Source: Macrostomum lignano (lineage: Eukaryota). From it: DNA of 64,000 bases. Position 1 is the stretch's first letter; each line of letters starts with the position of its first letter. The notes beneath the pieces are model-generated. The model saw only the letters and a list, made by a program, of their open reading frames with translations, ran no database searches and was not told the DNA's origin. This document shows, piece after piece, positions 3,153 to 64,000 of this stretch. A program made the position numbers and the translations under genes. The stretch covers positions 1 to 64,000 of the forward strand of contig NIVC01000086.1 of NCBI GenBank assembly GCA_002269645.1, read 5' to 3'.

Positions 3153-5581
<2,429 letters not shown>

Positions 5582-14497: not shown

Positions 14498-14722
14498 ATG
14501 ACCGACTACTCCGACCCACTGAACCCTCAATTTTCTGGCGTCGGTTTGTGCGCCGTCTGTGGCCTGACCGCCACCGGCGTGCACTACGGAGCCGCTACGT
14601 GCAATGCTTGTAAAGCTTTCTTTAAGCGGACTGTGCACTCCTGCCTGACTTACCTGTGCGCTAGCAGTACCGACGGCCAGTACCAGCCGTTTCTGCAGGT
14701 GAGAGGATTGACTTGCTATGCA

Positions 14723-14783
<61 letters not shown>

Positions 14784-15454: not shown

Positions 15455-16909
15455 ACAGCCTCAGCCGCAGCACAGTCCCCGCCCGTCCCCCAATTCAGGA
15501 CCCGAAACAGCAGTCGCCGCTGTGTCCGGTGAACAACGCCAGCCGGAAGCAGTGCCCCGCCTGCCGGTGGCGCCGCTGCCTCATGTCCGGGATGCAGCCG
15601 GGCATGCTGCGCACGGTAGCTCCTGGCACCGAGTCGGAGCGATACCCCCGGCTGCACCGGGCTGAGGCTTCAGCCGCCAGGGCCGCTGCCAGAGCCGCCG
15701 CTCGAGCCGCCGCCGCGGCGAATCAAGCAGCTTCTGGTCCGGCAGCTTCAACGAATTCCAGCGCTGACACGCCGCGCACAGCCTCACCGTCTGCTGGAGA
15801 AGTCGAAAGCGAACTGTGCAAAGTAAGGAGCTCCGCGTATGTCTGCCCGCACCCTCTTGAGCCTCTGTACCTGTTCCTGAGTTCATATTTTACAGCCAGC
15901 GCTGAGGCAAATTCTGGCCATTCTGCTGACTCCTGAGCAACATACAAGCGCACCAATACTGTACGCAGACACAGCACTCATACACAGCTCACACAGGTGT
16001 ACAGTGGCCCCTGACTTTCTAATCGTCTTTGAGGGGTTGGCCCTCATGGCTGTGATGTAACGCACGGCATCGAACCAGGGTTCGCGGCGCAAGATTCAGA
16101 CGCTGCTCTGCCAACACCCGGCCGCCCCACACCTCTAGAAGCTCAGCAACCGTTGTGAATGCCTCTCAGTAACTTGAATATATGCATCGCCTGACCGTCG
16201 GTTGCAGACCATCCGCTCCATGGACAGGCCCCAGTTCTCAATGGAAACATCAACAATGGGCGAAGATTTCCTCTCCGTGGAGCCGCGCGAACTGGCCGTG
16301 ATTGTCCTGCCCTGTCTGGATGCCCACTCGGCCAGGCTGGTACAGTTCGCCAAAGACCTGCCGGGCTTCAGCCGGGTCGCCATGCCCGACCGCATCCGCC
16401 TGTTGCAGGCCCACTGGGCCGGTCTGGTCTCATTCGAGCTGTCCATGAACTCGGTGCCCTTCACCGGCCTGCTGTACTTCGCGGCCAACGTCTGCGTGCC
16501 CCCAGGCCGGGTGAGCGCGTTCAACAGCAGCCTGGCCATGCGTGCCAGCCAGCAGATTCGATTGACAGCTCGACTGCTCACCGAGTGGAACGTCAGTCGC
16601 ATCGAATTCCTGCTGCTAAAAGCAATCTTTATGCTGCAGTGCCCGCCAGGCCAGCATTTCGACAATCCGGACGAAATCGACAAGTTGCAGTCGACTTTTC
16701 TTAGAGAGCTTCGCCGAATCTGTCCGGATGTTGTCCGCCGCGGCAAATTGATGGCTCTGTCAGGCCGCATCAACTCGATTCGATTATTCTGTTTGGGCTT
16801 CTGGTCCTCCTATTTTGATAGGCAGGCCATTAGAATGCCGCAGCTTTTCTCTGAGATGCTGCAATCTTCGGTTAACAGCGAGCCGTCTTTGGTTACTATG
16901 GACGCGTAG
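14498..16909 (+). CDS. Nuclear hormone receptor NR-C, >=408 aa; join(14498-14698,15499-15822,16208-16909), with a possible extra small exon from 15896
   Basis: [40 protein letters not shown]...|[67 protein letters not shown]-2 LFSEML. Donors GTGAGA 14699 and GTAAGG 15823; acceptors at 15498 and 16207; all phase 0. Confidence 0.87.
14715..15455. repeat. (TCTG)n microsatellite with TG interruptions in the NR-C DBD intron
   Basis: Direct reading. Explains the CLSV/TDRQ ORFs. Confidence 0.97.
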
Positions 16910-27929: not shown

Positions 27930-28035
27930 TTTTTATAGCCGCCAACTGGATCGCAATTTGTTATAATGAAACACCTCGACGCTGATTGGCTGAGCCGATT
28001 TGTTATAACTGACGTCGAATTTTTTGATTGGCTGA
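27930..28035 (-). promoter_or_regulatory. Putative minus-strand core promoter (2x CCAAT + TATA)
   Basis: Minus strand has GCTCAGCCAATC twice (~28027-28037 and ~27985-27995) followed by CTATAAAAA (27938-27930). A perfect CAG|GTAAGT donor lies downstream at 26967/26966. Confidence 0.45.
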
Positions 28036-31000: not shown

Positions 31001-32482
31001 TCAATAAATATTCTTCTTTTTCAACAATTCTTGGATAGGCCTACAAGACATGCTTGGTTTCAAATCTAGAGTTTATTGCATACTATGTCTTGCCCTTCCA
31101 AAATAACCTTTTCCCTAATGGCTTGTCTATAAACTAGTTTAGATTGTCATATTTGAAGAGACCAACCCCTGCAGCACTTTAACAAATATCAACAGAAATT
31201 GTTAGGTAGCTTCAATCTCACTCTGCATTCTTACTCTTATTTCCTAGCAGATGAACAGTTTAAAAAGAGTTTTTGTCTGCTTAGCAGGCAAATTATATTT
31301 AGACAAAATTACTGGCCCCCATTTTAGAACTTCAATAAGTAGTCCTAGGTTTGAATTAGGAAATGCTGCTAGATATAGCTAACTAGTTTAACTAGGACAA
31401 CAAAGAATATCAATGTCAACCATCTATCTAAAATGAGTTTATATCTAGACAACTCTGCCAAATGCTAAGGTTGATTTTATCAAATCCTATTCCAATTCAT
31501 TTGGACAAGGTGCTATAGTAGATAGACAATTTATAGCTATATTTCTAATTGCATTTTCTGCTTTGGCAGAGGCTCTATAGTCTAGACTTTAATTTGAATG
31601 ATATATTTCTATTCAAATGGCTAAAAGGCTAGCTTTTCTAAGTTTTGCAAACTATAGAGGTCAAATAGGCTACATTGTACTAGTTCTAGTAGTTGGAGGA
31701 AAAACCTGCAAGTGTAAATGGACAATCTATATTAAGCATTGCCAAAGGATCATATATAGGGAAACTATCGTTGATTAATATAGTTTTGTTTATCTGCAAT
31801 TGCAAGTTCATCTATTTTCATGTTATAAAATTATTTGTGTGACATACTCAAAGTACATAAAAAGCCATTAATAAAAAAAACATTAGACAACCTAAACAAC
31901 CCTACATGCTTAGATAAAGATTCTTTAAGTTTAAAGATACAAGCGTATAGTTACTTTTGTATCTTGAACTTTTATTTAAAAAAACATGCTTTCATCTATT
32001 TTAACTAGGCCCTAATTATGAGTTTTTTTAGATATATAGCTTTTGATATGTATCAACATAAATGACAATATATGTATAAGTATAACCTGACAATGATATA
32101 GTTATAGTTGATAATGTATTCTGCCATGTGCTATATTCTTAGATGTTTTTGTTCACAAATATTTATTTGCAATAGTGTCTAGGGCACCCTTCCTATATGA
32201 CCATATTGGGATATCCAGATAAATATATATTTTTGTTTAGCTATTCTATTAATTAAATAAACATGCTGTTATTTTCTATTTTAATATTATATATCATGTC
32301 TAGTTACAATATATCATATTATAATCCTGAGTCATGAGATCTTATATTGCTTACTTGCAATTATAGGCGATACAAGTATTAAAACTTTAATGTACGTCAT
32401 CACCTAGATCATCAACTCTGCATCTAGCCAAAGTCACTAATAGACTGTCAAATCTTTGCAGAAAACCCCACGCCAATCAACA

Positions 32483-35122
32483 ATGTCGCACGCTTTATTC
32501 GCTGGCTCTGGCGGTTCCGTAGCTCCAGCCTCTCGCTATCTGGTGGAATTCAAGGCTGGCAAGATGACACTGCAGGATGGTTGGGTCCGGCCTATCAATA
32601 AAAAGGGCATGGTCTACGTGCACCAGAGCGACGACAATCTGATGCACTTTTGTTGGAAAGATCGAACCAGCGGCTTGGTTGAAGACGATTTGATCATCTT
32701 TCCTGATGATTGCGAATTTAAACGGGTGACTCAGTGCACAACTGGACGGGTTTATCTGCTCAAGTTCAAATCCAGCAGCAAGAAGTACTTCTTCTGGATG
32801 CAGGTGCGCGGTTGGGGCTATCGAGATGCTGAGAATTGGAACCTGGATTAATCAGAGTTCAGACTGGGATAGTAAATTCAGTAGATGAAGAGGGCAGATT
32901 CGGAAGATGAGGATGGCAGATTCGGAAGATGAGGATGGCAGATTCGGAAGATGAGGATGGCAGATTCGGAAGGTGAGGTTGGTTGGCAGATTCGGAAGAT
33001 GAGGATGGCAGATTCGGAAGATGAGGAGGGCAGATTCAGAAGATGAGGATGGCAGATTCAGTAAATAGAAGGGCGGGTCAGTCAGATCCTACTGCTATCA
33101 TGTGTTAACTATCATGTGTTATCATGTGTCCTTAGCTGTGCGGTAAGGACAGTTCAGTTAAACCCCCCCCCCATAAATCCATAAATCCATAAATCCATAA
33201 ATCCTCAACCCTGTCAGGAGCCGAAAGAGGACAAAGACGCCGATCTGTGCAAGAAGGTGAACGATTCGCTGAACAACCCGCCTCAGCCGGGCTCCGGTCG
33301 GGCTGGCGGCGGCGGCGCGGCCTCGGCTGGCGGCATCGGTGGAGCCGGCGGCGGTTCGGGCAGCCTGAGCTCTGCACTTAGCGGCTTAGGCGAGTCGGAG
33401 CTCAGTAGTATGTTTGGCAATATTTCCCAGAGCGAGCTGATGCAACTGCTGCAGATGGGCATGCAGATGGGCCTTAGCCCGTCCGGGATGATGCGACCGG
33501 CCTCTACTGGGGCGGGATCTACTGCTTCTGATGGGGCCTCGGAGGCGCCTACGGGCTCTTCAGTGCCTAGTCGGGTAGGTTTGCTTAGCTTTTTAGGTCA
33601 AGCCAGTGAGAATCGCCACAGATCTATGAGAATTGCCTCAGATTTATGAGAATCGCCCCAGATCTATGAGAATCGCCTCAGATCTATGAGAATCGCCTCA
33701 GATCTATGAGAATCGCCACAGATCTATGAGAATTGCCTCAGATTTATGAGAATCGCCCCAGATCTATGAGAATCGCCTCAGATCTATGAGAATCGCCCCA
33801 GATCTATGAGAATCGCCCCAGATCTATGAGAATCGCCTCAGATCTATGAGAATCGCCCCAGATCTATGAGAATCGCCCCAGATCTATGAGAATCGCCTCA
33901 GATCTATGAGAATCGCCCCAGATCTATGAGAATCGCCTCAGATCTATGAGAATCGCCCCAGATCTATGAGAATCGCCCCAGATCTATGAGAATCGCCCCA
34001 GATCTATGAGAATCGCCCCAGATCTATGAGAATCGCCCCAGATCTATGAGAATCGCCCCAGATCTATGAGAATCGCCCCAGATCTATGAGAATCGCCCCA
34101 GATCTATGAGAATCGCCTCAGATCTATGAGAATCGCCCCAGATCTATGAGAATCGCCCCAGATCTATGAGAATCGCCCCAGATCTATGAGAATCGCCTCA
34201 GATCTATGAGAATCGCCCCAGATCTATGAGAATCGCCTCAGATCTATGAGAATCGCCCCAGATCTATGAGAATCGCCCCAGATCTATGAGAATCGCCCCA
34301 GATCTATGAGAATCGCCTCAGATCTATGAGAATCGCCCCAGATCTATGAGAATCGCCCCAGATCTATGAGAATCGCCCCAGATCTATGAGAATTGTCCAT
34401 TGTTAAGCCTACTCATTCCATCCCGCGCCCAGGTGCAAAGCTCGCCTGGAGTTCGCCCCGCCGGCAGCGGCGCCAATTCCGCGGCTTCGGGCGCCAGACA
34501 GACAATGCCGGAGCGCCCGGCCACCGCGGCCGCCTCCGCCGGTGGAGTCGCCGCCGGCAGCGGCGGAGGTCGCGAGCTTCAACAGACGCCACTGCAGCAG
34601 CAGCAGCGCACAGCCGGCGGTCGAATTCAGCTTAGCGATCTGCAGACAATCCTCACCTCCATCCAGGCTCCCGAAGGCGCCGCTCCGGCTTCGGCTGGCT
34701 CAGCTGGCGCCCAGTTTGACCTGAACGACGCCCTGCCAATCGAATCGCTGCTGCCCCTGCTAGCCGACGCCCAGCTGCAGGCCCGTCTGATGCCTTTCCT
34801 GCCCGACAGTCCGGATCTGCCGCGCAGTGTCGACGAATTGCGTCGTTCAGTTCAATCGCCGCAATTTCGCCAGTGCGTGTCGGCGTTCGCGGCCGCTCTG
34901 CGCACCGGCGAGCTGGGACCGCTGGTTGCCCAGTTCGGCGTCGGCGAGGCCGCCGTTCAAGCGGCTAACGAAGGCAACGCCGAGGCGTTTATGCGCGCCC
35001 TGCAGCAGCCGAAGCCGACTGCCGCCGCCGCTGCTGCTGAAGGCAGCGAGGATGTCGAAATGGCCGCTTCCGCTGCCAAGCCTGACGCCAAGGATGAGGA
35101 GGAGAAAATGGACGAGAGTTGA
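32483..35122 (+). CDS. ADRM1: Proteasomal ubiquitin receptor Rpn13/ADRM1, ~455 aa; join(32483-32803,33218-33574,34433-35122)
   Basis: Pru domain LVEFKAGKM...[55 protein letters not shown]...FFWMQ|[23 protein letters not shown]-terminal DEUBAD-like [29 protein letters not shown]. Phase-0 GT-AG introns. Acceptor TTTGCAG at 32461 implies an upstream non-coding exon or trans-splicing. Confidence 0.96.
32890..33062. repeat. 22-bp minisatellite (ggcagattcggaagatgaggat) in ADRM1 intron 1
   Basis: About 7 copies. Confidence 0.9.
33605..34395. repeat. 20-bp minisatellite (gatctatgagaatcgcccca) filling ADRM1 intron 2
   Basis: About 39 copies. Confidence 0.97.
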
Positions 35123-43253: not shown

Positions 43254-44683
43254 TCAGGGATCGTAGAATGCGTTGCTGGGTCCCTCGGACATGCTGAACC
43301 GGGACCGCTCGTCGTCGCCGGTGGACCTCAGCGAGAGGTGAATCAAGCCGCCCCCGCCACCGCCGCTGCGACCGCCGCAGCTGTTGTCGGTACCGAGCCG
43401 TTTTCGCCTCGTCCTGTCGACGCCGCCGCCGCCGCCGGCGGAACCTCCTTGTGTTGGGGCCCCGGTGGTGGAGCGCGCCGAGCCAGCGTTGCCAGTCTTG
43501 GGCTGCCGGAAGCAGAGCAAGCCGAACATGCGCTTAAACACCTGGCGGAACTGCTTGCTCATGAAGCAATAGAGCACGAAGTTCACCGAGTTGTTGATCA
43601 GGCCCAGCGTGTTCAGCATGCGGATGAACAAATAGAAGAAGCACTGCACCCCCGGCAGGTTGAACATCGGGTCCTCCAGGATGTTCAGCATGCTCATCGG
43701 GATCTCGTACAGGATGTACAGCACAATGATGACCAGCAGGAAGCTGGTAGTTCGTCGGTGATCCCTCGATCGACGCTGTCGTCGAGAATTTTTCGACGCT
43801 GAGCCTCTCGACGATCGCTGTGTCCCCTGGGTCGGCATTGGCGACAGCTGCGACAGCGAGTGCTGCGGCGACGGCGAAGGCTGCCGCGTAGTCTCGACCT
43901 CCGAGTTGGCGAAGCTCTCGCAGCCGCGCCTGCTGCTGCTGCTGTTGTTCCGGTTCATCCGCCAGTCCTCGAACGGCTGTTCAGATTCACCAGCGACTCG
44001 CGACGCTTCTCTGTCTTGCGCAGACTCTTGATGATGAAGAAGCAGAAGCAGGTCATGATGAGGCAGGGCAAAACCTTCTGGGCCAGGCCGTTGAACAATC
44101 GGATTTTGAATTCGTGCCGCTCGTCCAGACTCGGTCTGTACATCACCGGGCTGTGGCCGCTCTGCCCGGTGTTATTGTGCGTGTCGTTAAAGCCGCGGAT
44201 CTGCAGGCTGCTGGCATAGGGAACCACGGCCACCAGGTTGGCCAGGAAGGCCAGGCAAACGGCCAGGCGGGCGCGGGCCAGGCTGAACCACACCTTGGTG
44301 CGGCTGGAGGCGTAGTAGCGCAGGTAGAAGAAGCGGAACAGAGCCAGCAGGACGCCGCACCACAGGGCGAAAGCGTGCATCAGGTACATGGCCACGTTGC
44401 AGAACAGGTAGAACACCTGGTAGTCGTAGCTGTGGCTCATCTGGTCCAGGGGAACTACCGAGGTGACCAGGAACATGAGCACTTTGATTAGGTCGCTCAC
44501 CGCGATGCCTAACAGTATGCTGTTAGTTGGCGAGATCATCTTCTTCTTGCTGAAGATGAGTATGTTCAACACGTTCAGCAGGATTGAGGTCACGGATATG
44601 ACTGCGATTAGCGGCAGGCTGATCTGATTGAAGGCCTGAGCGACTAAGCTCTCCGAGCAGTTGTTGCGTCTGGCGTCAGACAT
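43254..44683 (-). CDS. Class A (rhodopsin-like) peptide GPCR of the sex-peptide/myosuppressin/Srw-like group. Single coding exon with one apparent 1-bp deletion near 43980
   Basis: TM1 NVLNILIF, TM2 SPTNSILLGIAVSDL, TM3 ALWCGVLLALFRF, TM5 KVLPCLIM, TM6 RRTTSFLL...YEIP, TM7 NNSVNFVLYCFMSKQFR. ORFs 43955-44683 and 43254-43958 join by a -1 shift in ICL3. A 5'UTR intron runs 45228-44685 (GTGAGT...CCGCAG|GATG). Confidence 0.9.
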
Positions 44684-44691
44684 CCTGCGGG

Positions 44692-44696
<5 letters not shown>

Positions 44697-44731
<35 letters not shown>

Positions 44732-44754
44732 CCAGTAGTAGTAGTAGTAGTACC

Positions 44755-44800
<46 letters not shown>

Positions 44801-44802
44801 CC

Positions 44803-44839
<37 letters not shown>

Positions 44840-44901
44840 CCAGTAGTAGTAGTAGTAGTAGTAGTAGTACCAGTAGTAGTAGTAGTAGTAGTAGTAGTAC
44901 C

Positions 44902-44938
<37 letters not shown>

Positions 44939-45000
44939 CCAGTAGTAGTAGTAGTAGTAGTAGTAGTACCAGTAGTAGTAGTAGTAGTAGTAGTAGTACC

Positions 45001-45055
<55 letters not shown>

Positions 45056-45192
45056 CCAGTAGTAGTAGTAGTAGTAGTACCAGTAGTACCAGTAGTAGTA
45101 GTAGTAGTAGTACCAGTAGTAGTAGTAGTAGTAGTACCAGTAGTACCAGTAGTAGTAGTAGTAGTAGTACCAGTAGTACCAGTAGTAGTAGT
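44697..45192. repeat. (TAG)n microsatellite with TAC-CAG interruptions in the GPCR 5'UTR intron
   Basis: Direct reading. Explains the poly-L/poly-V ORFs. Confidence 0.97.
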
Positions 45193-51577: not shown

Positions 51578-52355
<778 letters not shown>

Positions 52356-52887
52356 TTACTCATTGATGTTTGTGTCTATTCACTGTCTACTACACTATCT
52401 GTTCACTCGCCAATTCTCAGCCACCCTAACAATCAAATACCTACGAAAGCAATAGTACAGAACGAAAGGCATATTTTTGAATACTCAACCACGCGGGAAA
52501 TTTTGCCAGCTGTTCCCAAAAATGATTTCCAAAACACAGGAAAATTGAGCAAACTGATAGCTCACGCGGCAAGATAAGTAGCTGATCTTACAGTGCAGAA
52601 TCCTAGCAGCTTTTTCAGGTAAGAAGTCTGCGCTCGAATTGACTTGATTAGCCGAATCTCTGGGGCTGCTCGCGATTCCCTGTAGCTATCGGGTCCTCGG
52701 CAATGTGGCGTCTGCTTTTCACAAACATCTCACAGACCTGCTCAGAAGCTGCGCCCCATCCCTACATCTGGCTCCTAGCCGCCTCATTGGATTCGGCTTT
52801 CCCAGACTCCCGTGCCTTCAGCTGTAGGCCAACGGGAACGGTTCCCATTGCATTCTGCCTTGTCTATCTGCCTTTGTGTCACGATTC

Positions 52888-53145
52888 GTCTGAGTGTCTC
52901 AATGTCTTAAGTGTCAGTGTTTTAGTCTCAGAGTGTCTTAGTGTGTCTTAATGTCTTGGTGTCTATAAGTGTCTCAGTGTCTCAGTGTCTTAATGTTTGA
53001 GTGTCTGAGTGTCTTAATGTTTGAGTGTCTGAGTGTCTTGGTGTCTTAGTGTCTGAGTGTCTTGTTGTCTGTTTTAGTGTCTGAGTGTCTCAGTGTCTTA
53101 ATGTTTGGGTGTCTTAATATTTTAGTATCTGAGTGTCTTAGTCTT
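52888..53145. repeat. Degenerate 8-bp repeat (gtgtctta/gtgtctga)
   Basis: Low-complexity tandem pattern. Confidence 0.7.
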
Positions 53146-53815
53146 TCAGAGCACTCGTGGCTTAATGCATTTAAGCCTTATTGTCTTTTCCTTCTTATTG
53201 TCCATTTTTACGTAGTCTTCCTGAGTGAAGTATTTTAGTCTGATACATTTCGAAAATTAATAGTTTTGCTAAGCTACCAAATGTTGAATTAATCAAATAA
53301 AGCAGCTATTGAATGCTGTTTAAAGTGTTACGCTATGTATTTTTAGAGATTCTTAGAAAAAGCTGTTATGGTGTTTGTTCGAGAAATTTTCAGTCCAATA
53401 AAATTTGTTACGTTGTTAGCAGCTGAAGAATTCAATAAATATTTATGAGTGTTAACAAATTGAAGTTCATACATAGTAAGTAGAACAGGCACGCAGATGT
53501 GTAGTATCATTAGAAGTAGTTAATATCACAAGCTATGCTTTAGAAAACGTTGTCTGCTACTAGATTTCAGTCTGCCGCTTAAACCAGATAAAAATACTTT
53601 CAGATCGGGAACATCTTCGTAACAGACACCTAACCTGTGTAAAATGTAAAAAATGAAGCCAGCCTTGGCCCAGCAGGATAAGAAATCGTAGCTGTTGAAT
53701 TGTTGAAAATCATTCTGTGACACTTATAAAGTTGCACGTTACTCAACACACTGTCGTCAGATATGCAATCACAAGCGAACCAGCTGAAATAAAATCACCT
53801 TCAGGCTGCATCTAA

Positions 53816-56800
53816 TTAGTGCTTCTTCACACGATGCTTGGTGCGCTTTACGCGCAAACGCCAAGCATGCCGCCCAGCTCGGCGATTGAACCACGTCACC
53901 TTGCGCACACTCTTCGGCGCCGGCCTCTTCCAGACGGTCTTTCGCCACTTCTTGAAGTGTACGCGCCAACTAGAACCATAGCGCCGACGATATTTTCGCT
54001 TGACGTAGAACCACTTCCAGTTGGACCCGTATCGGTGCTTAAACCATGCGATGCTGTACTTCCTTAAACGATGCTTCGTGCGCTTTACGTGCAAACGCCA
54101 AGCATGCCGCCCAGATCGGCGATTGAACCACGTGACCTTGCGCACATTCTTTGGGCTCGGCTTCTTCCAAACGCGTTTCAGCCACTTCCTAAAGTGCACG
54201 CGCCACTTGCGACCGTAGCGTCGACGGTAGACCACTCGGGTGTAGTACCAGCGCCACTTGCGACCGTAGTGTCTCTTGTACCAGGTGACCTTGTGCAGGA
54301 CGCGACGCTTCGGCGACGGCTTCTTCCAGACCGTTTTCACCCACCTTCGGAAGTGAGATCTCCATTTAATTCCAAATTTTCGATGATAAACCAGCCGAGT
54401 GTAATACCACCTCCAATTCTTAGGATAATGCTTTTTAAACCATCTCAAAGTGTGCACTATAACGTGCGGACGTTTTGGAGCCGGACGCTTCCACGTGTGC
54501 TTTTCCCATAGTTTAAAATGCACCCTCCACTTCCGACCAAATCGATGCTGATAAACAACTCGAGTGTAGTACCAACGCCAGTTTGTTCCATAACGTCGCT
54601 TGAACCAACCAACCTTGTGCAGGACGCGACGCTTCGGTGACGGCTTCTTCCACACTCGCTTCAGCCACTTCCTAAAGTGCACGCGCCACTTGCGACCGTA
54701 GCGTCGACGGTAAACCACTCGGGTGTAGTACCAGCGCCACTTGCGACCGTAGTGTCTCTTGTACCAGGTGACCTTGTGCAGGACGCGACGCTTCGGTGAC
54801 GGCTTCTTCCACACTCTCTTCAGCCACTTCCTAAAGTGCACGCGCCACTTGCGACCGTAGCGTCGACGGTAGACCACTCGGGTGTAGTACCAGCGCCACT
54901 TGCGACCGTAGTGTCTCTTGTACCAGGTGACCTTGTGCAGGACGCGACGCTTCGGCGACGGCTTCTTCCAGACCGTTTTCACCCACCTTCGGAAGTGAGA
55001 TCTCCATTTAATTCCAAATTTTCGATGATAAACCAGCCGAGTGTAATACCACCTCCAATTCTTAGGATAATGCTTTTTAAACCATCTCAAAGTGTGCACT
55101 ATAACGTGCGGACGTTTTGGAGCCGGACGCTTCCACGTGTGCTTTTCCCATAGTTTAAAATGCACCCTCCACTTCCGACCAAATCGATGCTGATAAACAA
55201 CTCGAGTGTAGTACCAACGCCAGTTTGTTCCATAACGTCGCTTGAACCAACCAACCTTGTGCAGGACGCGACGCTTCGGTGACGGCTTCTTCCACACTCG
55301 CTTCAGCCACTTCCTAAAGTGCACGCGCCACTTGCGACCGTAGCGTCGACGGTAGACCACTCGGGTGTAGTACCAGCGCCACTTGCGACCGTAGTGTCTC
55401 TTGTACCAGGTGACCTTGTGCAGGACGCGACGCTTCGGTGACGGCTTCTTCCACACTCGCTTCAGCCACTTCCTAAAGTGCACGCGCCACTTGCGACCGT
55501 AGCGTCGACGGTAGACCACTCGGGTGTAGTACCAGCGCCACTTGCGACCGTAGTGTCTCTTGTACCAGGTGACCTTGTGCAGGACGCGACGCTTCGGTGA
55601 CGGCTTCTTCCACACTCGCTTCAGCCACTTCCTAAAGTGCACGCGCCACTTGCGACCGTAGCGTCGACGGTAGACCACTCGGGTGTAGTACCAGCGCCAC
55701 TTGCGACCGTAGTGTCTCTTGTACCAGGTGACCTTGTGCAGGACGCGACGCTTCGGTGACGGCTTCTTCCACACTCGCTTCAGCCACTTCCTAAAGTGCA
55801 CGCGCCACTTGCGACCGTAGCGTCGACGGTAGACCACTCGGGTGTAGTACCAGCGCCACTTGCGACCGTAGTGTCTCTTGTACCAGGTGACCTTGTGCAG
55901 GACGCGACGCTTCGGTGACGGCTTCTTCCACACTCTCTTCAGCCACTTCCTAAAGTGCACGCGCCACTTGCGACCGTAGCGTCGACGGTAGACCACTCGG
56001 GTGTAGTACCAGCGCCACTTGCGACCGTAGTGTCTCTTGTACCAGGTGACCTTGTGCAGGACGCGAAGCTTCGGTGACGGCTTCTTCCACACTCTCTTCA
56101 GCCACTTCCTAAAGTGCACGCGCCACTTGCGACCGTAGCGTCGACGGTAGACCACTCGGGTGTAGTACCAGCGCCACTTGCGACCGTAGTGTCTCTTGTA
56201 CCAGGTGACCTTGTGCAGGACGCGACGCTTCGGTGACGGCTTCTTCCACACTCGCTTCAGCCACTTCCTAAAGTGCACGCGCCACTTGCGACCGTAGCGT
56301 CGACGGTAGACCACTCGGGTGTAGTACCAGCGCCACTTGCGACCGTAGTGTCTCTTGTACCAGGTGACCTTGTGCAGGACGCGACGCTTCGGTGACGGCT
56401 TCTTCCACACTCGCTTCAGCCACTTCCTAAAGTGCACGCGCCACTTGCGACCGTAGCGTCGACGGTAGACCACTCGGGTGTAGTACCAGCGCCACTTGCG
56501 ACCGTAGTGTCTCTTGTACCAGGTGACCTTGTGCAGGACGCGACGCTTCGGTGACGGCTTCTTCCACACTCGCTTCAGCCACTTCCTAAAGTGCACGCGC
56601 CACTTGCGACCGTAGCGTCGACGGTAGACCACTCGGGTGTAGTACCAGCGCCACTTGCGACCGTAGTGTCTCTTGTACCAGGTGACCTTGTGCAGGACGC
56701 GACGCTTCGGTGACGGCTTCTTCCACACTCGCTTCAGCCACTTCCTAAAGTGCACGCGCCACTTGCGACCGTAGCGTCGACGGTAGACCACTCGGGTGTA

Positions 56801-59800
56801 GTACCAGCGCCACTTGCGACCGTAGTGTCTCTTGTACCAGGTGACCTTGTGCAGGACGCGACGCTTCGGCGACGGCTTCTTCCAGACCGTTTTCACCCAC
56901 CTTCGGAAGTGAGATCTCCATTTAATTCCAAATTTTCGATGATAAACCAGCCGAGTGTAATACCACCTCCAATTCTTAGGATAATGCTTTTTAAACCATC
57001 TCAAAGTGTGCACTATAACGTGCGGACGTTTTGGAGCCGGACGCTTCCACGTGTGCTTTTCCCATAGTTTAAAATGCACCCTCCACTTCCGACCAAATCG
57101 ATGCTGATAAACAACTCGAGTGTAGTACCAACGCCAGTTTGTTCCGTAACGTCGCTTGAACCAACCAACCTTGTGCAGGACGCGACGCTTCGGTGACGGC
57201 TTCTTCCACACTCTCTTCAGCCACTTCCTAAAGTGCACGCGCCACTTGCGACCGTAGCGTCGATGGTAGACCACTCGGGTGTAGTACCAGCGCCACTTGC
57301 GACCGTAGTGTCTCTTGTACCAGGTGACCTTGTGCAGGACGCGACGCTTCGGTGACGGCTTCTTCCACACTCTCTTCAGCCACTTCCTAAAGTGCACGCG
57401 CCACTTGCGACCGTAGCGTCGACGGTAGACCACTCGGGTGTAGTACCAGCGCCACTTGCGACCGTAGTGTCTCTTGTACCAGGTGACCTTGTGCAGGACG
57501 CGACGCTTCGGTGACGGCTTCTTCCACACTCTCTTCAGCCACTTCCTAAAGTGCACGCGCCACTTGCGACCGTAGCGTCGACGGTAGACCACTCGGGTGT
57601 AGTACCAGCCCCACTTGCGACCGTAGTGTCTCTTGTACCAGGTGACCTTGTGCAGGACGCGACGCTTCGGTGACGGCTTCTTCCACACTCGCTTCAGCCA
57701 CTTCCTAAAGTGCACGCGCCACTTGCGACCGTAGCGTCGACGGTAGACCACTCGGGTGTAGTACCAGCGCCACTTGCGACCGTAGTGTCTCTTGTACCAG
57801 GTGACCTTGTGCAGGACGCGACGCTTCGGTGACGGCTTCTTCCACACTCGCTTCAGCCACTTCCTAAAGTGCACGCGCCACTTGCGACCGTAGCGTCGAC
57901 GGTAGACCACTCGGGTGTAGTACCAGCGCCACTTGCGACCGTAGTGTCTCTTGTACCAGGTGACCTTGTGCAGGACGCGACGCTTCGGTGACGGCTTCTT
58001 CCACACTCTCTTCAGCCACTTCCTAAAGTGCACGCGCCACTTGCGACCGTAGCGTCGACGGTAGACCACTCGGGTGTAGTACCAGCGCCACTTGCGACCG
58101 TAGTGTCTCTTGTACCAGGTGACCTTGTGCAGGACGCGACGCTTCGGTGACGGCTTCTTCCACACTCGCTTCAGCCACTTCCTAAAGTGCACGCGCCACT
58201 TGCGACCGTAGCGTCGACGGTAGACCACTCGGGTGTAGTACCAGCGCCACTTGCGACCGTAGTGTCTCTTGTACCAGGTGACCTTGTGCAGGACGCGACG
58301 CTTCGGTGACGGCTTCTTCCACACTCGCTTCAGCCACTTCCTAAAGTGCACGCGCCACTTGCGACCGTAGCGTCGACGGTAGACCACTCGGGTGTAGTAC
58401 CAGCGCCACTTGCGACCGTAGTGTCTCTTGTACCAGGTGACCTTGTGCAGGACGCGACGCTTCGGTGACGGCTTCTTCCACACTCGCTTCAGCCACTTCC
58501 TAAAGTGCACGCGCCACTTGCGACCGTAGCGTCGACGGTAGACCACTCGGGTGTAGTACCAGCGCCACTTGCGACCGTAGTGTCTCTTGTACCAGGTGAC
58601 CTTGTGCAGGACGCGACGCTTCGGTGACGGCTTCTTCCACACTCGCTTCAGCCACTTCCTAAAATGCACGCGCCACTTGCGACCGTAGCGTCGACGGTAG
58701 ACCACTCGGGTGTAGTACCAGCGCCACTTGCGACCGTAGTGTCTCTTGTACCAGGTGACCTTGTGCAGGACGCGACGCTTCGGTGACGGCTTCTTCCACA
58801 CTCGCTTCAGCCACTTCCTAAAGTGCACGCGCCACTTGCGACCGTAGCGTCGACGGTAGACCACTCGGGTGTAGTACCAGCGCCACTTGTGACCGTAGTG
58901 TCTCTTGTACCAGGTGACCTTGTGCAGGACGCGACGCTTCGGTGACGGCTTCTTCCACACTCGCTTCAGCCACTTCCTAAAGTGCACGCGCCACTTGCGA
59001 CCGTAGCGTCGATGGTAGACCACTCGGGTGTAGTACCAGCGCCACTTGCGACCGTAGTGTCTCTTGTACCAGGTGACCTTGTGCAGGACGCGACGCTTCG
59101 GTGACGGCTTCTTCCACACTCTCTTCAGCCACTTCCTAAAGTGCACGCGCCACTTGCGACCGTAGCGTCGATGGTAGACCACTCGGGTGTAGTACCAGCG
59201 CCACTTGCGACCGTAGTGTCTCTTGTACCAGGTGACCTTGTGCAGGACGCGACGCTTCGGTGACGGCTTCTTCCACACTCGCTTCAGCCACTTCCTAAAG
59301 TGCACGCGCCACTTGCGACCGTAGCGTCGACGGTAGACCACTCGGGTGTAGTACCAGCGCCACTTGCGACCGTAGTGTCTTTTGTACCAGGTGACCTTGT
59401 GCAGGACGCGACGCTTCGGTGACGGCTTCTTCCACACTCGCTTCAGCCACTTCCTAAAGTGCACGCGCCACTTGCGACCGTAGCGTCGACGGTAGACCAC
59501 TCGGGTGTAGTACCAGCGCCACTTGCGACCGTAGTGTCTCTTGTACCAGGTGACCTTGTGCAGGACGCGACGCTTCGGTGACGGCTTCTTCCACACTCTC
59601 TTCAGCCACTTTCTAAAGTGCACGCGCCACTTGCGACCGTAGCGTCGACGGTAGACCACTCGGGTGTAGTACCAGCGCCACTTGCGACCGTAGTGTCTCT
59701 TGTACCAGGTGACCTTGTGCAGGACGCGACGCTTCGGTGACGGCTTCTTCCACACTCGCTTCAGCCACTTCCTAAAGTGCACGCGCCACTTGCGACCGTA

Positions 59801-62800
59801 GCGTCGACGGTAGACCACTCGGGTGTAGTACCAGCGCCACTTGCGACCGTAGTGTCTCTTGTACCAGGTGACCTTGTGCAGGACGCGACGCTTCGGTGAC
59901 GGCTTCTTCCACACTCGCTTCAGCCACTTCCTAAAGTGCACGCGCCACTTGCGACCGTAGCGTCGACGGTAGACCACTCGGGTGTAGTACCAGCGCCACT
60001 TGCGACCGTAGTGTCTCTTGTACCAGGTGACCTTGTGCAGGACGCGACGCTTCGGTGACGGCTTCTTCCACACTCTCTTCAGCCACTTCCTAAAGTGCAC
60101 GCGCCACTTGCGACCGTAGCGTCGACGGTAGACCACTCGGGTGTAGTACCAGCGCCACTTGCGACCGTAGTGTCTCTTGTACCAGGTGACCTTGTGCAGG
60201 ACGCGACGCTTCGGTGACGGCTTCTTCCACACTCGCTTCAGCCACTTCCTAAAGTGCACGCGCCACTTGCGACCGTAGCGTCGACGGTAGACCACTCGGG
60301 TGTAGTACCAGCGCCACTTGCGACCGTAGTGTCTCTTGTACCAGGTGACCTTGTGCAGGACGCGACGCTTCGGCGACGGCTTCTTCCAGACCGTTTTCAC
60401 CCACCTTCGGAAGTGAGATCTCCATTTAATTCCAAATTTTCGATGATAAACCAGCCGAGTGTAATACCACCTCCAATTCTTAGGATAATGCTTTTTAAAC
60501 CATCTCAAAGTGTGCACTATAACGTGCGGACGTTTTGGAGCCGGACGCTTCCACGTGTGCTTTTCCCATAGTTTAAAATGCACCCTCCACTTCCGACCAA
60601 ATCGATGCTGATAAACAACTCGAGTGTAGTACCAACGCCAGTTTGTTCCATAACGTCGCTTGAACCAACCAACCTTGTGCAGGACGCGACGCTTCGGTGA
60701 CGGCTTCTTCCACACTCGCTTCAGCCACTTCCTAAAGTGCACGCGCCACTTGCGACCGTAGCGTCGACGGTAAACCACTCGGGTGTAGTACCAGCGCCAC
60801 TTGCGACCGTAGTGTCTCTTGTACCAGGTGACCTTGTGCAGGACGCGACGCTTCGGTGACGGCTTCTTCCACACTCTCTTCAGCCACTTCCTAAAGTGCA
60901 CGCGCCACTTGCGACCGTAGCGTCGACGGTAGACCACTCGGGTGTAGTACCAGCGCCACTTGCGACCGTAGTGTCTCTTGTACCAGGTGACCTTGTGCAG
61001 GACGCGACGCTTCGGCGACGGCTTCTTCCAGACCGTTTTCACCCACCTTCGGAAGTGAGATCTCCATTTAATTCCAAATTTTCGATGATAAACCAGCCGA
61101 GTGTAATACCACCTCCAATTCTTAGGATAATGCTTTTTAAACCATCTCAAAGTGTGCACTATAACGTGCGGACGTTTTGGAGCCGGACGCTTCCACGTGT
61201 GCTTTTCCCATAGTTTAAAATGCACCCTCCACTTCCGACCAAATCGATGCTGATAAACAACTCGAGTGTAGTACCAACGCCAGTTTGTTCCATAACGTCG
61301 CTTGAACCAACCAACCTTGTGCAGGACGCGACGCTTCGGTGACGGCTTCTTCCACACTCGCTTCAGCCACTTCCTAAAGTGCACGCGCCACTTGCGACCG
61401 TAGCGTCGACGGTAGACCACTCGGGTGTAGTACCAGCGCCACTTGCGACCGTAGTGTCTCTTGTACCAGGTGACCTTGTGCAGGACGCGACGCTTCGGTG
61501 ACGGCTTCTTCCACACTCGCTTCAGCCACTTCCTAAAGTGCACGCGCCACTTGCGACCGTAGCGTCGACGGTAGACCACTCGGGTGTAGTACCAGCGCCA
61601 CTTGCGACCGTAGTGTCTCTTGTACCAGGTGACCTTGTGCAGGACGCGACGCTTCGGTGACGGCTTCTTCCACACTCGCTTCAGCCACTTCCTAAAGTGC
61701 ACGCGCCACTTGCGACCGTAGCGTCGACGGTAGACCACTCGGGTGTAGTACCAGCGCCACTTGCGACCGTAGTGTCTCTTGTACCAGGTGACCTTGTGCA
61801 GGACGCGACGCTTCGGTGACGGCTTCTTCCACACTCGCTTCAGCCACTTCCTAAAGTGCACGCGCCACTTGCGACCGTAGCGTCGACGGTAGACCACTCG
61901 GGTGTAGTACCAGCGCCACTTGCGACCGTAGTGTCTCTTGTACCAGGTGACCTTGTGCAGGACGCGACGCTTCGGTGACGGCTTCTTCCACACTCTCTTC
62001 AGCCACTTCCTAAAGTGCACGCGCCACTTGCGACCGTAGCGTCGACGGTAGACCACTCGGGTGTAGTACCAGCGCCACTTGCGACCGTAGTGTCTCTTGT
62101 ACCAGGTGACCTTGTGCAGGACGCGAAGCTTCGGTGACGGCTTCTTCCACACTCTCTTCAGCCACTTCCTAAAGTGCACGCGCCACTTGCGACCGTAGCG
62201 TCGACGGTAGACCACTCGGGTGTAGTACCAGCGCCACTTGCGACCGTAGTGTCTCTTGTACCAGGTGACCTTGTGCAGGACGCGACGCTTCGGTGACGGC
62301 TTCTTCCACACTCGCTTCAGCCACTTCCTAAAGTGCACGCGCCACTTGCGACCGTAGCGTCGACGGTAGACCACTCGGTGTAGTACCAGCGCCACTTGCG
62401 ACCGTAGTGTCTCTTGTACCAGGTGACCTTGTGCAGGACGCGACGCTTCGGTGACGGCTTCTTCCACACTCGCTTCAGCCACTTCCTAAAGTGCACGCGC
62501 CACTTGCGACCGTAGCGTCGACGGTAGACCACTCGGGTGTAGTACCAGCGCCACTTGCGACCGTAGTGTCTCTTGTACCAGGTGACCTTGTGCAGGACGC
62601 GACGCTTCGGTGACGGCTTCTTCCACACTCGCTTCAGCCACTTCCTAAAGTGCACGCGCCACTTGCGACCGTAGCGTCGACGGTAGACCACTCGGGTGTA
62701 GTACCAGCGCCACTTGCGACCGTAGTGTCTCTTGTACCAGGTGACCTTGTGCAGGACGCGACGCTTCGGTGACGGCTTCTTCCACACTCGCTTCAGCCAC

Positions 62801-64000
62801 TTCCTAAAGTGCACGCGCCACTTGCGACCGTAGCGTCGACGGTAGACCACTCGGGTGTAGTACCAGCGCCACTTGCGACCGTAGTGTCTCTTGTACCAGG
62901 TGACCTTGTGCAGGACGCGACGCTTCGGCGACGGCTTCTTCCAGACCGTTTTCACCCACCTTCGGAAGTGAGATCTCCATTTAATTCCAAATTTTCGATG
63001 ATAAACCAGCCGAGTGTAATACCACCTCCAATTCTTAGGATAATGCTTTTTAAACCATCTCAAAGTGTGCACTATAACGTGCGGACGTTTTGGAGCCGGA
63101 CGCTTCCACGTGTGCTTTTCCCATAGTTTAAAATGCACCCTCCACTTCCGACCAAATCGATGCTGATAAACAACTCGAGTGTAGTACCAACGCCAGTTTG
63201 TTCCGTAACGTCGCTTGAACCAACCAACCTTGTGCAGGACGCGACGCTTCGGTGACGGCTTCTTCCACACTCTCTTCAGCCACTTCCTAAAGTGCACGCG
63301 CCACTTGCGACCGTAGCGTCGATGGTAGACCACTCGGGTGTAGTACCAGCGCCACTTGCGACCGTAGTGTCTCTTGTACCAGGTGACCTTGTGCAGGACG
63401 CGACGCTTCGGTGACGGCTTCTTCCACACTCGCTTCAGCCACTTCCTAAAGTGCACGCGCCACTTGCGACCGTAGCGTCGACGGTAGACCACTCGGGTGT
63501 AGTACCAGCGCCACTTGCGACCGTAGTGTCTCTTGTACCAGGTGACCTTGTGCAGGACGCGACGCTTCGGCGACGGCTTCTTCCAGACCGTTTTCACCCA
63601 CCTTCGGAAGTGAGATCTCCATTTAATTCCAAATTTTCGATGATAAACCAGCCGAGTGTAATACCACCTCCAATTCTTAGGATAATGCTTTTTAAACCAT
63701 CTCAAAGTGTGCACTATAACGTGCGGACGTTTTGGAGCCGGACGCTTCCACGTGTGCTTTTCCCATAGTTTAAAATGCACCCTCCACTTCCGACCAAATC
63801 GATGCTGATAAACAACTCGAGTGTAGTACCAACGCCAGTTTGTTCCGTAACGTCGCTTGAACCAACCAACCTTGTGCAGGACGCGACGCTTCGGTGACGG
63901 CTTCTTCCACACTCTCTTCAGCCACTTCCTAAAGTGCACGCGCCACTTGCGACCGTAGCGTCGACGGTAGACCACTCGGGTGTAGTACCAGCCCCACTTG
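53816..64000 (-). CDS. 3' part of a giant (>3,390 aa in window) Arg/Lys/Trp/Tyr-rich tandem-repeat protein of unknown function. 159-bp (53-aa) units, 5' end outside the window, one 1-bp deletion at 62377-62378
   Basis: Stop-free reading for 8.6 kb plus 1.6 kb. Unit lengths (159, 159, 165 bp) are all multiples of 3, there are synonymous variants between units, and a divergent C-terminal cap ends ...KHRVKKH-TAA. Other frames contain stops. Confidence 0.85.

What the first reader, a model, noticed from the sequence alone, without database searches (positions are those of the whole stretch)
53816..64000. Giant polycationic-aromatic (R/K + W/Y) repeat protein encoded by a >10 kb single exon
Seen: the main 53-aa unit RRVLHKVTWYKRHYGRKWRWYYTRVVYRRRYGRKWRVHFRKWLKRVWKKPSPK has 13 R + 9 K (22/53), 6 W + 6 Y + 1 F, 3 H and no D/E/C/M. 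There are roughly 47 A units plus 7 B and 7 C variants, and the frame is still open at the window edge. Unlike the window's non-coding minisatellites, all unit-length variation is in-frame, and diverged B/C/cap units keep the W/Y/G skeleton while changing codons. This argues for selection on the protein. Known: R/K with W/Y drives cation-pi coacervation and wet adhesion, R/W-rich peptides are membrane-active antimicrobials, and Macrostomum has a large K/R-rich repetitive adhesive protein (Mlig-ap1). I do not recognise this W/Y-rich unit as that protein or any named family. Inference: a novel secreted structural, adhesive or granule protein, a multi-copy antimicrobial polyprotein, or a nucleic-acid-condensing protein.
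Basis: partly seen in the sequence, partly recalled or inferred. Interest (0 to 1): 0.92.

Follow-up and report, generated by a model that had tools for sequence, protein, structure and literature searches.

The report
Giant secreted arginine-tryptophan repeat protein gene
The 10-kb repeat is the real, selected 3' end of a giant, extremely positively charged, tryptophan/tyrosine-rich secreted protein of the flatworm Macrostomum lignano; it has no relatives outside that species and no known function, and is most plausibly a glue- or matrix-type material.

Summary
Window 53816-64000 (minus strand) carries 61 complete 159/165-bp units (47 A, 7 B, 7 C), a partial unit at the edge, a diverged 110-aa cap and a TAA stop.

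It is coding. Between unit types pS is 0.71-0.93 and pN 0.20-0.32 (omega about 0.1) in the claimed frame only. All six Trp positions are invariant.

One correction: a 158-bp unit (62288-62445, CCC to CC at about 62378) breaks the frame. It is probably a long-read homopolymer error.

The window is M. lignano contig NIVC01000086.1. The missing 5' part lies on two other contigs. It has six exons encoding a signal peptide, a Ser-rich stretch, a weak VWA-like domain and 17-aa [FY]KKK[YF]GxxWxxH[YF] repeats. These run in frame into the 53-aa array (17+17+19).

The protein is therefore secreted, over 4,500 aa, and carries about +22 charge per unit. No homologue exists outside M. lignano. By architecture it is not Mlig-ap1.

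The tissue is unknown. My best reading is a secreted polycationic, aromatic matrix or adhesive protein. The antimicrobial-polyprotein and DNA-condensing readings are disfavoured.

The parts
53816..53818 (-). TAA stop codon of the gene
   Evidence: ORF end in the ORF listing. Sequence '...aag cac taa'. Same end as the GenBank CDS PAA91463.1.
   Evidence: Translation. Alignment of its internal unit with A/B/C shows 20 invariant columns, including all six W.
54149..62287 (-). In-frame block of 51 units (41 A, 5 B, 5 C; 159 or 165 bp) that is continuous with the cap and the stop
   Evidence: A units differ from their consensus by 32 nt in total across 41 copies. B and C copies are virtually identical to each other.
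62288..62445 (-). The single 158-bp A unit. CCC has become CC at about 62377-62378, which shifts the reading frame. It is otherwise identical to the consensus A unit.
   Evidence: The same deletion recurs 5 times in L002 and twice in L003.
62446..64000 (-). Upstream units (partial A, then B C A A B C A A A), open in the other frame (63999..62446). The array continues beyond the window.
   Evidence: L001 shows 9 more in-frame A units up to record position 65495.
54472..54789 (-). Example of a B + C variant pair (B 54631-54789, C 54472-54630). The seven such pairs start at 63888, 63246, 61333, 60691, 57187, 55273 and 54631.
   Evidence: Codon-level divergence from A gives omega about 0.1.

Best explanation
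What is shown.
- The array is the terminal exon of a real, transcribed protein-coding gene of Macrostomum lignano.
- The deduced protein has, in order: an N-terminal signal peptide (MRLGGIAPLYATAVLLLIVALAPTATA|KRE); a Ser-rich acidic stretch; a degenerate VWA-like domain; about 500 aa of lysine/aromatic 17-aa repeats ([FY]KKK[YF]G-x-x-W-x-x-H[YF]-x-x-W); at least 71 copies of an arginine-enriched 53-aa unit made of three such repeats (17+17+19, ending KKPSPK); and a diverged cap.
- It is therefore a secreted polypeptide of over 4,500 aa and over 600 kDa. It has roughly +22 net charge and 12 Trp/Tyr per 53 residues, and no Cys or acidic residues in the array.

What is inferred.
- Each 17-aa repeat forms a short amphipathic helix with an aromatic stripe.
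- The protein is stored and released by a gland cell as a polycationic material.
- It condenses with polyanions (sulfated or carboxylated glycans, glycocalyx, mucus). It coheres and adheres through electrostatic, cation-pi and pi-pi contacts.
- It would thus be a cohesive or adhesive matrix component, functionally analogous to the polycationic Mlig-ap1 and to R/K/Y/W-rich mussel foot proteins. The VWA-like domain would act as a protein-docking end.

The producing tissue is not known. Adhesive organ, cement or shell glands, rhabdites and mucus are all open.
For: Identity of the window.
- The window equals NIVC01000086.1:1-64000. L001 overlaps it exactly.

Coding.
- Omega is about 0.1 in one frame only.
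- Within-A variants are 10 synonymous to 4 non-synonymous events, P = 1.1e-4.
- All W are invariant.

Transcription.
- Both ends are CDS features of the Mlig_3_7 annotation.
- That annotation was built from RNA-seq and a de novo transcriptome, and was filtered against repeat-overlapping transcripts. The filter explains why both models are 'partial' (PMC5730564).

5' end.
- P0003 maps to six exons with an ATG and GT/AG boundaries on L002 and L003.
- In L003 the last exon reads in frame from the 17-aa repeats into 11 A units.
- The older UniProt model P0002 joins the same N-terminal region to the array.

VWA-like domain.
- Pfam PF00092 gives E = 0.0015.
- PDB hits are collagen VI alpha3 and vWF A1.
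- The only non-Macrostomum hits of an exhaustive phmmer search are two multi-VWA proteins, aligned to residues 108-213.

Repeat structure and composition.
- The repeat period is exactly 17.
- AlphaFold predicts helix with pLDDT 64-91 over P0003 residues 270-400.

Precedent.
- Mlig-ap1 is a giant secreted K/R-rich cohesive protein of the same animal. Its action is blocked by polyanions such as heparin (PMC6410801).
Against: - I found no expression, localisation or proteomic data. Gene IDs are absent from the text and stored supplements of the papers checked. Six N-terminal tryptic peptides are absent from the stored, truncated part of the footprint and tail proteomes.
- The 5' and 3' halves lie on different contigs, so their physical continuity is inferred from identical units and from P0002.
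- As assembled, the frame is broken once in the window and 6-9 times in each of the other two copies. If those breaks are real, most of the array would not be translated.
- The structure model of the array itself is uninformative, with pLDDT 50.6.
- The VWA hit is below Pfam's threshold. By my own reading, the MIDAS DxSxS motif is not conserved (DKNAI).
- No AATAAA or ATTAAA lies within 1.5 kb downstream of the stop.
Confidence: 0.55

Rival explanations
1. Polyprotein precursor. The array is cut at the many basic sites into short R/W-rich antimicrobial or signalling peptides. For example, ...RRRY-Gly-Arg-Lys would give an amidated RY-NH2 end.
For: - The A unit contains YGRK twice. Gly followed by two basic residues is the classical convertase/amidation signal (own knowledge).
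- R/W-rich peptides are membrane-active (own knowledge).
- The protein enters the secretory pathway.
Against: - Across 21 copies of the 17-aa repeat, only 6 have two basic residues after the Gly. The others read YGEA, FGSA, YGLK, YGKD, YGTN, YPKN, FGIK, YGSN and YGSS.
- In contrast, the Trp at +3 is kept in 20 of 21. Selection therefore acts on a structural G-x-x-W motif, not on a cleavage site.
- There are no acidic pro-pieces to neutralise the cargo.
- Basic pairs are so dense that cleavage would leave di- to penta-peptides.
- Over 140 copies and 600 kDa would be unprecedented for a prohormone.
Confidence: 0.12
2. Decaying or truncated gene copy. The frameshifts are real, translation stops within the first dozen units, and most of the 10-kb array in the window is an untranslated relic.
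For: - There is one frameshift in the window, and 6-9 in each of L002 and L003.
- DV1 worms carry redundant gene copies (PMC5730564).
Against: - The dominant lesion is the same one-base loss in a C3 homopolymer, always in the same direction. The remaining indels sit mostly toward the contig end or N gap.
- This pattern is typical of PacBio consensus error in near-identical repeats that short reads cannot polish. The assembly used Canu plus Pilon.
- The 51 units downstream of the shift contain no further indel or stop over 8.1 kb.
- A-unit variants in the main ORF are biased towards synonymous changes.
- The B, C and cap units lie 3' of the shifts and evolved under omega about 0.1.
Confidence: 0.12
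3. Intracellular nucleic-acid-condensing protein, of the protamine or SNBP type.
For: - The array has extreme R/K content and pI about 12.
- The UniProt model P0002 starts without a signal peptide.
Against: - The better-supported model P0003 has a canonical signal peptide encoded by spliced 5' exons on two contigs.
- P0002's start is an internal Met of the same sequence.
- 11% Trp, a VWA-like domain and the very large size are unlike sperm nuclear basic proteins (own knowledge).
Confidence: 0.05
4. It is part of the already characterised adhesive protein Mlig-ap1, one of its K/R-rich regions.
For: - It is from the same species.
- Mlig-ap1 has over 3,600 aa of extremely basic repeats described as 'GRK'-rich.
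- Our unit contains GRK twice.
Against: - Mlig-ap1 is 5,407 aa, and its C-terminal KR region is at most about 1,100 aa (residues after 4310). Here at least 3,760 aa of one array run straight into the stop.
- The Mlig-ap1 repeats are described as G/R/K low-complexity regions, and the peptide used to raise the Mlig-ap1 antibody is SRKPRRKNRKSRKP. That peptide is absent from all frames of the window and L001-L003.
- None of 18 Mlig-ap1 primers matches, allowing up to 2 mismatches.
- The described Mlig-ap1 architecture has no VWA-type domain, and ours has no C-lectin/vWD/C8/TIL/EGF core.
- Mlig-ap1 maps to scaf1170.
- A direct alignment was impossible because Mlig-ap1 is not in the searchable protein collection.
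Confidence: 0.03
5. Non-coding minisatellite that happens to have an open frame, like the many others in this window.
For: - The window holds dozens of minisatellites.
- A 159-bp unit has a sizeable chance of one open frame.
Against: - Omega is about 0.1 in one frame only.
- The Trp, Gly and Pro columns are invariant.
- The array is continuous in frame with spliced upstream exons.
- It carries annotated, transcript-derived CDS.
Confidence: 0.02

Closest known systems
Mlig-ap1 (Macrostomum lignano adhesion protein 1; GenBank MH586844; Wunderer et al. 2019, PMC6410801)
   Same: - Same animal.
- Giant secreted protein with a signal peptide.
- Thousands of residues of tandem, extremely basic repeats.
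- Repeats that short-read assemblies break.
- It provides a plausible functional model: a polycation that binds negatively charged glycans and provides cohesion.
   Different: - Mlig-ap1 repeats are G/R/K low-complexity regions that flank a Cys-rich C-lectin-vWD-C8-TIL-EGF core.
- This protein has a 53-aa unit with 11% Trp, 11% Tyr and 11% Val, no Cys, a VWA-like N-terminal domain and a 17-aa helical sub-repeat.
- None of 18 Mlig-ap1 primers and no antibody epitope is present.
- No expression or RNAi data exist for this gene.
Mussel foot proteins mfp-3/mfp-5 and sandcastle-worm polycationic cement proteins (recalled from memory, not tested)
   Same: Secreted proteins rich in Arg/Lys together with Tyr (and Trp in mfp-3). 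Cation-pi and electrostatic complexation drive coacervation and wet adhesion in these proteins.
   Different: - Those proteins are small (5-10 kDa), Gly/Asn-rich, intrinsically disordered and depend on DOPA.
- There is no sequence similarity: no hits.
- Here the protein is over 600 kDa, built of regular and probably helical repeats. Whether its Tyr is modified is unknown.
VWA-domain extracellular matrix proteins (collagen VI alpha3, von Willebrand factor A1, matrilins)
   Same: Residues about 108-213 of the N-terminal part align weakly to VWA. Such domains mediate protein-protein docking in extracellular matrices.
   Different: The score is below Pfam's gathering threshold (19.2 against 23.8 bits). 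The metal-site motif appears lost. Nothing else in the protein resembles these families.
Arg/Trp-rich antimicrobial and cell-penetrating peptides (indolicidin, tritrpticin, lactoferricin-type; own knowledge)
   Same: R + W composition. The unit would be expected to bind anionic membranes and lipopolysaccharide.
   Different: Those are 10-25-mer peptides released from small precursors at defined sites. Here the putative sites are not conserved among diverged repeats, and the product is a giant polymer.

Membership tests
Protein-coding exon (versus non-coding minisatellite) | Excess of synonymous over non-synonymous change, in one frame only | tested here: met
   In the claimed frame pS is 0.71-0.93, pN 0.20-0.32 and omega about 0.10. 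The other five frames have omega 0.2-2.9 with stops. Within-A variants are 10 synonymous to 4 non-synonymous, P = 1.1e-4.
Protein-coding exon (versus non-coding minisatellite) | Uninterrupted reading frame through the whole array | tested here: not met
   One 158-bp unit at 62288-62445 (CCC to CC) shifts the frame. It is probably an assembly error, but that is unproven.
Secreted protein | N-terminal signal peptide on the same transcript | tested here: met
   - P0003 starts MRLGGIAPLYATAVLLLIVALAPTATA|KRE: a basic n-region, a hydrophobic core and A-x-A before the cut. This is my own reading, as no SignalP tool was available.
- It is encoded by spliced exons on L002 and L003.
- The last exon runs in frame into A units in L003.
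- The link to the window's contig is inferred.
Mlig-ap1 | Cys-rich core (C-type lectin, vWD, C8, TIL, EGF modules) between the K/R-rich regions | tested here: not met
   Pfam finds none of these in P0003, the units or the cap. The array has no Cys. The unseen stretch between L003's array and record position 65495 could not be read.
Mlig-ap1 | G/R/K low-complexity repeats containing the antibody epitope SRKPRRKNRKSRKP | tested here: not met
   The epitope and its sub-strings are absent from all six frames of the window and L001-L003. The unit has only 3.8% Gly.
Mlig-ap1 | Matches the published Mlig-ap1 probe and dsRNA primers (transcripts RNA815_13121, _317.1 and _27695) | tested here: not met
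   None of 18 primers matches the window or L001-L003 with up to 2 mismatches.
Mlig-ap1 | Direct sequence identity to MH586844 | not testable with these tools
   A probe made of published Mlig-ap1 peptides retrieved nothing, so the protein is not in the searchable collection.
Mlig-ap1 | Expression in adhesive gland cells and a non-adhesive RNAi phenotype | not testable with these tools
   No expression data were found for Mlig025189 or Mlig034012.
VWA domain (PF00092) | Profile score at or above Pfam's gathering threshold | tested here: inconclusive
   The score is 19.2 bits against a 23.8 cut-off, E = 0.0015. Weak but consistent hits go to collagen VI and vWF A1 and to two multi-VWA proteins. 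UniProt labels fragment P0005 as VWFA.
VWA domain (PF00092) | Rossmann-like alpha/beta fold and a MIDAS DxSxS motif | tested here: inconclusive
   The AlphaFold model has pLDDT below 50 over residues 49-259, and Foldseek found nothing. By eye the motif position reads D-K-N-A-I, so it is not conserved (inference).
Neuropeptide or antimicrobial polyprotein precursor | Conserved mono- or dibasic processing sites (Gly-[KR][KR]) flanking each peptide copy | tested here: not met
   Only 6 of 21 17-aa repeats have two basic residues after the Gly, whereas the Trp at +3 is kept in 20 of 21.
Sperm nuclear basic proteins / protamine-like | Nuclear protein without a signal peptide | tested here: not met
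   A signal peptide is present.

The most novel reading that the evidence does not exclude
The 17-aa [FY]KKK[YF]GxxWxxH[YF]xxW motif and its arginine-rich 53-aa derivative define a previously undescribed, Macrostomum-restricted protein repeat. It would be an aromatic-striped cationic helix polymerised more than 70 times into a secreted polycation of over 600 kDa. This polycation would work as a cation-pi glue, coacervate or antimicrobial barrier material in a gland type not yet characterised at the molecular level. It would be a second giant polycation, independent of Mlig-ap1, in the flatworm secretory toolkit.
Probability: 0.35. Interest if true: 0.72.

Novelty: new variant of a known kind. 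Interest (0 to 1): 0.58.

Why it matters
- Giant repetitive secreted proteins are what flatworm glues are made of, and they are systematically lost or fragmented in short-read transcriptomes. This gene is currently split into two 'hypothetical, partial' GenBank entries and mislabelled UniProt models ('Reverse transcriptase domain-', 'CARD domain-containing').
- Joining the pieces shows one secreted protein with one of the most extreme Arg/Lys plus Trp/Tyr compositions one could design for cation-pi cohesion. It is built from a regular, selectable 17/53-aa module.
- If it proves to be a glue, cement or barrier component, it offers a short, DOPA-free, recombinantly tractable motif for wet-adhesion and coacervate materials.
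- It would also give a second handle on how M. lignano handles polycations in secretion and release.
- It is a clean example of how to tell a coding array from the surrounding non-coding minisatellites.

Tried and rejected
- **Pfam.** Scans of the units plus cap, and of the N-terminal region of P0002, gave nothing at E up to 10.
- **Array structure.** Single-sequence AlphaFold of A-B-C-A-cap gave pLDDT 50.6 and was unusable.
- **N-terminal structure.** The P0003 model is confident only for the 17-aa repeats. Foldseek against the PDB gave no hit below E = 0.5.
- **Helix or strand.** A hydrophobic-moment scan could not separate helix from strand periodicity.
- **Fetching Mlig-ap1.** A 105-aa probe of published Mlig-ap1 peptides found nothing. 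The published supplement holds the repeat alignments only as images.
- **Expression data.** Mlig025189 is absent from all searchable paper texts. Neither ID occurs in the stored supplements of three papers, and a fourth had no supplement held as text.
- **Footprint proteomics.** Six N-terminal tryptic peptides are absent from the stored (truncated) Wunderer datasets.
- **Literature.** A search for Trp/Arg-rich or rhabdite proteins in Macrostomum returned nothing relevant.
- **Non-coding satellite.** I considered and rejected this reading.
- **Contig end.** I could not read record positions 65496-72754, because the flank limit is 10 kb and no other called gene lies there.


Full report
**1. What is in the sequence**

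Tandem Repeats Finder reports a 159-bp array from 54158 to the window end: 61.6 copies at 86% matches.

Its composition is 13 R, 9 K, 6 W, 6 Y, 1 F and 3 H, with no D/E/C/M. It has pI about 12 and net charge +22.

Typing every unit gives:
- 47 A, 7 B and 7 C complete units
- a partial A at the window edge
- a TAA stop at 53816-53818

The B-C pairs recur as blocks, and copies of B and of C are virtually identical to each other. A copies differ from their consensus by only 32 nt across 41 copies. The array is therefore young or homogenised.

**2. One correction to the observation**

The frame is not continuously open.
- The frame that is open from 62485 to 53816 has stops upstream of 62488.
- The units from 63999 to 62446 are open in another frame.

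The cause is a single 158-bp unit at 62445-62288. In it, the CCC of ACACCCGAG is CC, at about 62377-62378. The unit is otherwise identical to consensus A.

Across the window plus the 1.5 kb beyond it, 70 whole units measure 62 x 159, 7 x 165 and 1 x 158 bp.

**3. Is it coding?**

Yes.
- Nei-Gojobori comparison of the A, B and C consensus units (49-71 nt differences) gives pS 0.71-0.93 against pN 0.20-0.32 in the claimed frame, so omega is about 0.10.
- The other five frames give omega 0.2-2.9 and contain 1-6 stops.
- About 8% of random substitutions in a unit create a stop. The chance of none in 49-71 changes is 0.002-0.015.
- Within A units I count 10 synonymous events, including a TCA to AGC Ser-to-Ser triple change, against 4 non-synonymous events. 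The neutral expectation is 22% synonymous, giving P = 1.1e-4.
- An alignment of A, B, C and the cap's internal unit has 20 invariant columns. These include all six Trp, the second Gly and the P-x-P-K end.

This sets the array apart from the window's other minisatellites.

**4. Where it comes from and what else belongs to it**

*Source.* A protein search with A-B-C-A-cap found a single cluster: PAA91463.1, 'hypothetical protein BOX15_Mlig025189g1, partial' of Macrostomum lignano. It is encoded on NIVC01000086.1 (72,754 bp) at 53816-55495. The fetched locus overlaps the window base for base, so the window is positions 1-64000 of that contig. The array continues in frame for at least 9 more A units, to position 65495.

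*The existing annotation.* The annotated CDS skips 483 bp, which is exactly one A+B+C block. This looks like a mapped collapsed transcript rather than a real intron. That is evidence for transcription, and it explains the 'partial' labels.

*The N-terminal region.* The same 90% cluster holds UniProt A0A1I8IPI2. This is a 4,094-aa model from the older assembly that joins a non-array N-terminal region to the array. Searching with that region found BOX15_Mlig034012g1 (P0003, 709 aa, partial), which lies on NIVC01001672.1 (L002) and NIVC01002000.1 (L003).

*Exon structure.* P0003 maps to six exons with an ATG and GT/AG boundaries. In L003 the last exon reads in frame from the N-terminal repeats straight into 11 A units.

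*Deduced architecture.* The protein has, in order:
- a signal peptide, MRLGGIAPLYATAVLLLIVALAPTATA|KRE
- a Ser-rich acidic stretch
- a VWA-like region
- about 500 aa of Lys/aromatic repeats
- the 53-aa array
- the cap

**5. The VWA-like region**

The evidence is weak but consistent.
- Pfam PF00092 gives E = 0.0015 and 19.2 bits, below the 23.8-bit cut-off.
- The best PDB sequence hits are collagen VI alpha3 and vWF A1.
- An exhaustive phmmer search of P0003 against 1.84 billion representatives found only two hits outside M. lignano, at E = 5e-5 and 4e-4. Both are multi-VWA proteins aligned to residues 108-213.
- By my own reading, the metal-site motif is not conserved.

I treat this region as a probable degenerate VWA domain.

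**6. The repeat module**

The N-terminal repeats have a period of exactly 17. They fit [FY]KKK[YF]G-x-x-W-x-x-H[YF]-x-x-W. The A unit contains the same motif at positions 8 and 25 and a degenerate third copy ending KKPSPK, so 53 = 17 + 17 + 19. The array is thus an arginine-enriched, acid-free triplet derivative of an older Lys-rich repeat within the same protein.

Single-sequence AlphaFold gives helices with pLDDT 64-91 over P0003 residues 270-400. For the array itself the model is unusable, with pLDDT 50.6. Foldseek finds nothing.

The aromatic spacing (i, i+4, i+8, i+11/12) would put Trp, Tyr and Phe on one helical face. This is inference.

**7. The frameshift**

Indels per array:

| Array | Whole units | Units with frame-breaking indels | Units with the CCC to CC deletion |
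|---|---|---|---|
| Window + 1.5-kb extension | 70 | 1 | 1 |
| L002 | 45 | 9 | 5 |
| L003 | 43 | 6 | 2 |

- The dominant lesion is the same CCC to CC deletion, always in the same direction.
- The remaining indels sit mostly toward the contig end (L003) or the N gap (L002).
- The assembly is Canu on PacBio reads, polished with short reads by Pilon. Short reads cannot be placed uniquely in near-identical repeats.

I therefore read the shifts as consensus errors. This needs accurate reads to prove. If the shifts are real, this copy would be truncated.

**8. Function**

The sequence shows a secreted, Cys-free, acid-free polycation of over 4,500 aa, with about 23% aromatic residues in its array.

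My best-supported mechanism is a gland-stored polycationic matrix or adhesive protein. It would condense with polyanionic glycans and cohere through charge, cation-pi and pi-pi contacts, with the VWA-like end acting as a docking module.

The precedent is Mlig-ap1, the giant K/R-rich cohesive glue protein of the same worm. Its action is blocked by heparin-like polyanions (PMC6410801).

The step from 'secreted polycation' to 'adhesive or matrix' is inference, and the tissue is unknown. I found no expression record for either gene ID. I also found none of six N-terminal tryptic peptides in the stored part of the footprint and tail proteomes.

**9. Rival readings**

- *Antimicrobial or neuropeptide polyprotein.* YGRK looks like an amidation and cleavage signal. 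However, only 6 of 21 repeat copies keep two basic residues after the Gly, while the Trp at +3 is kept in 20 of 21. There are no acidic spacers.
- *DNA-condensing protein.* This is contradicted by the signal peptide.
- *Part of Mlig-ap1.* This is contradicted on several counts:
  - Mlig-ap1's C-terminal KR region is at most about 1,100 aa, against at least 3,760 aa here.
  - Mlig-ap1 has G/R/K low-complexity repeats and a Cys-rich core.
  - The antibody epitope is absent.
  - None of 18 Mlig-ap1 primers matches.
  - A direct alignment could not be run, because Mlig-ap1 is not in the searchable collection.
- *Non-coding satellite.* This is refuted.

**10. Novelty and verdict**

The gene's two ends already sit in GenBank and UniProt as uncharacterised or mislabelled fragments. 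No paper I could search mentions them.

No relative exists outside M. lignano, either in 5.8 billion clustered proteins or in 1.84 billion representatives. Other Macrostomum proteomes are probably not in those collections.

I class it as a new variant of a known kind: giant repetitive secreted polycations of flatworm secretions, here built from a new aromatic 17/53-aa module.

It is a real and interesting lead for bioadhesion and materials work. The interest is moderate rather than exceptional until the tissue and function are shown.

Noticed in passing
window 3153-3668 (+), 14468-14752 (+), 16202-16909 (+): Two nuclear-receptor DNA-binding domains (zf-C4, E = 6e-18 and 3e-14) and one ligand-binding domain (Hormone_recep, E = 1e-12). 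This looks like two tandem nuclear hormone receptor genes whose introns are filled with minisatellites.
   Followed up: partly
window 43254-44683 (-): Two adjacent ORFs together match an Srw-type / rhodopsin-family 7TM receptor (E = 5e-22 and 2e-11). This is probably one GPCR gene, next to a (GTA)n-like array at 44696-45192.
   Followed up: partly
window 34400-35122 (+): An ORF carries an RPN13_C (UCH-binding) domain, E = 4e-28. It is likely the C-terminal exon of the proteasomal ubiquitin receptor Rpn13/ADRM1.
   Followed up: partly
window 1-53200: The density of unrelated minisatellites is extraordinary. Periods range from 4 to 57 bp, many arrays are 0.5-2.7 kb long, and TRF reports 93 rows. 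Several yield long spurious ORFs on both strands. This fits the reported 15% tandem-repeat content of this genome (PMC5730564).
   Followed up: no
window 28001-32000: A 4-kb stretch with much lower G+C (0.30-0.36, against about 0.47 elsewhere). It has no tandem repeats or long ORFs. Its nature is unknown.
   Followed up: no
window 52316-53815 (minus-strand 3' flank of the gene): No AATAAA or ATTAAA hexamer lies within 1.5 kb downstream of the TAA stop. The polyadenylation site of this gene is therefore not obvious from the sequence.
   Followed up: partly
L002 18800-26245 and L003 16300-23540: - The other two copies of the array carry many 1-2-bp indels (9 of 45 and 6 of 43 units).
- L002 shows the pattern A x10, B, C, A, A, B, C just before an N gap. 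This mirrors the window's 3' end.
- That copy may therefore hold only about 46 units, against at least 71 here, which would be copy-number variation between paralogous or allelic loci.
   Followed up: partly
UniProt models P0002, P0004, P0005: Automatic names of fragments of this gene disagree with one another: 'Reverse transcriptase domain-containing', 'CARD domain-containing' and 'VWFA domain-containing'. For the first two I found no support in Pfam scans.
   Followed up: partly
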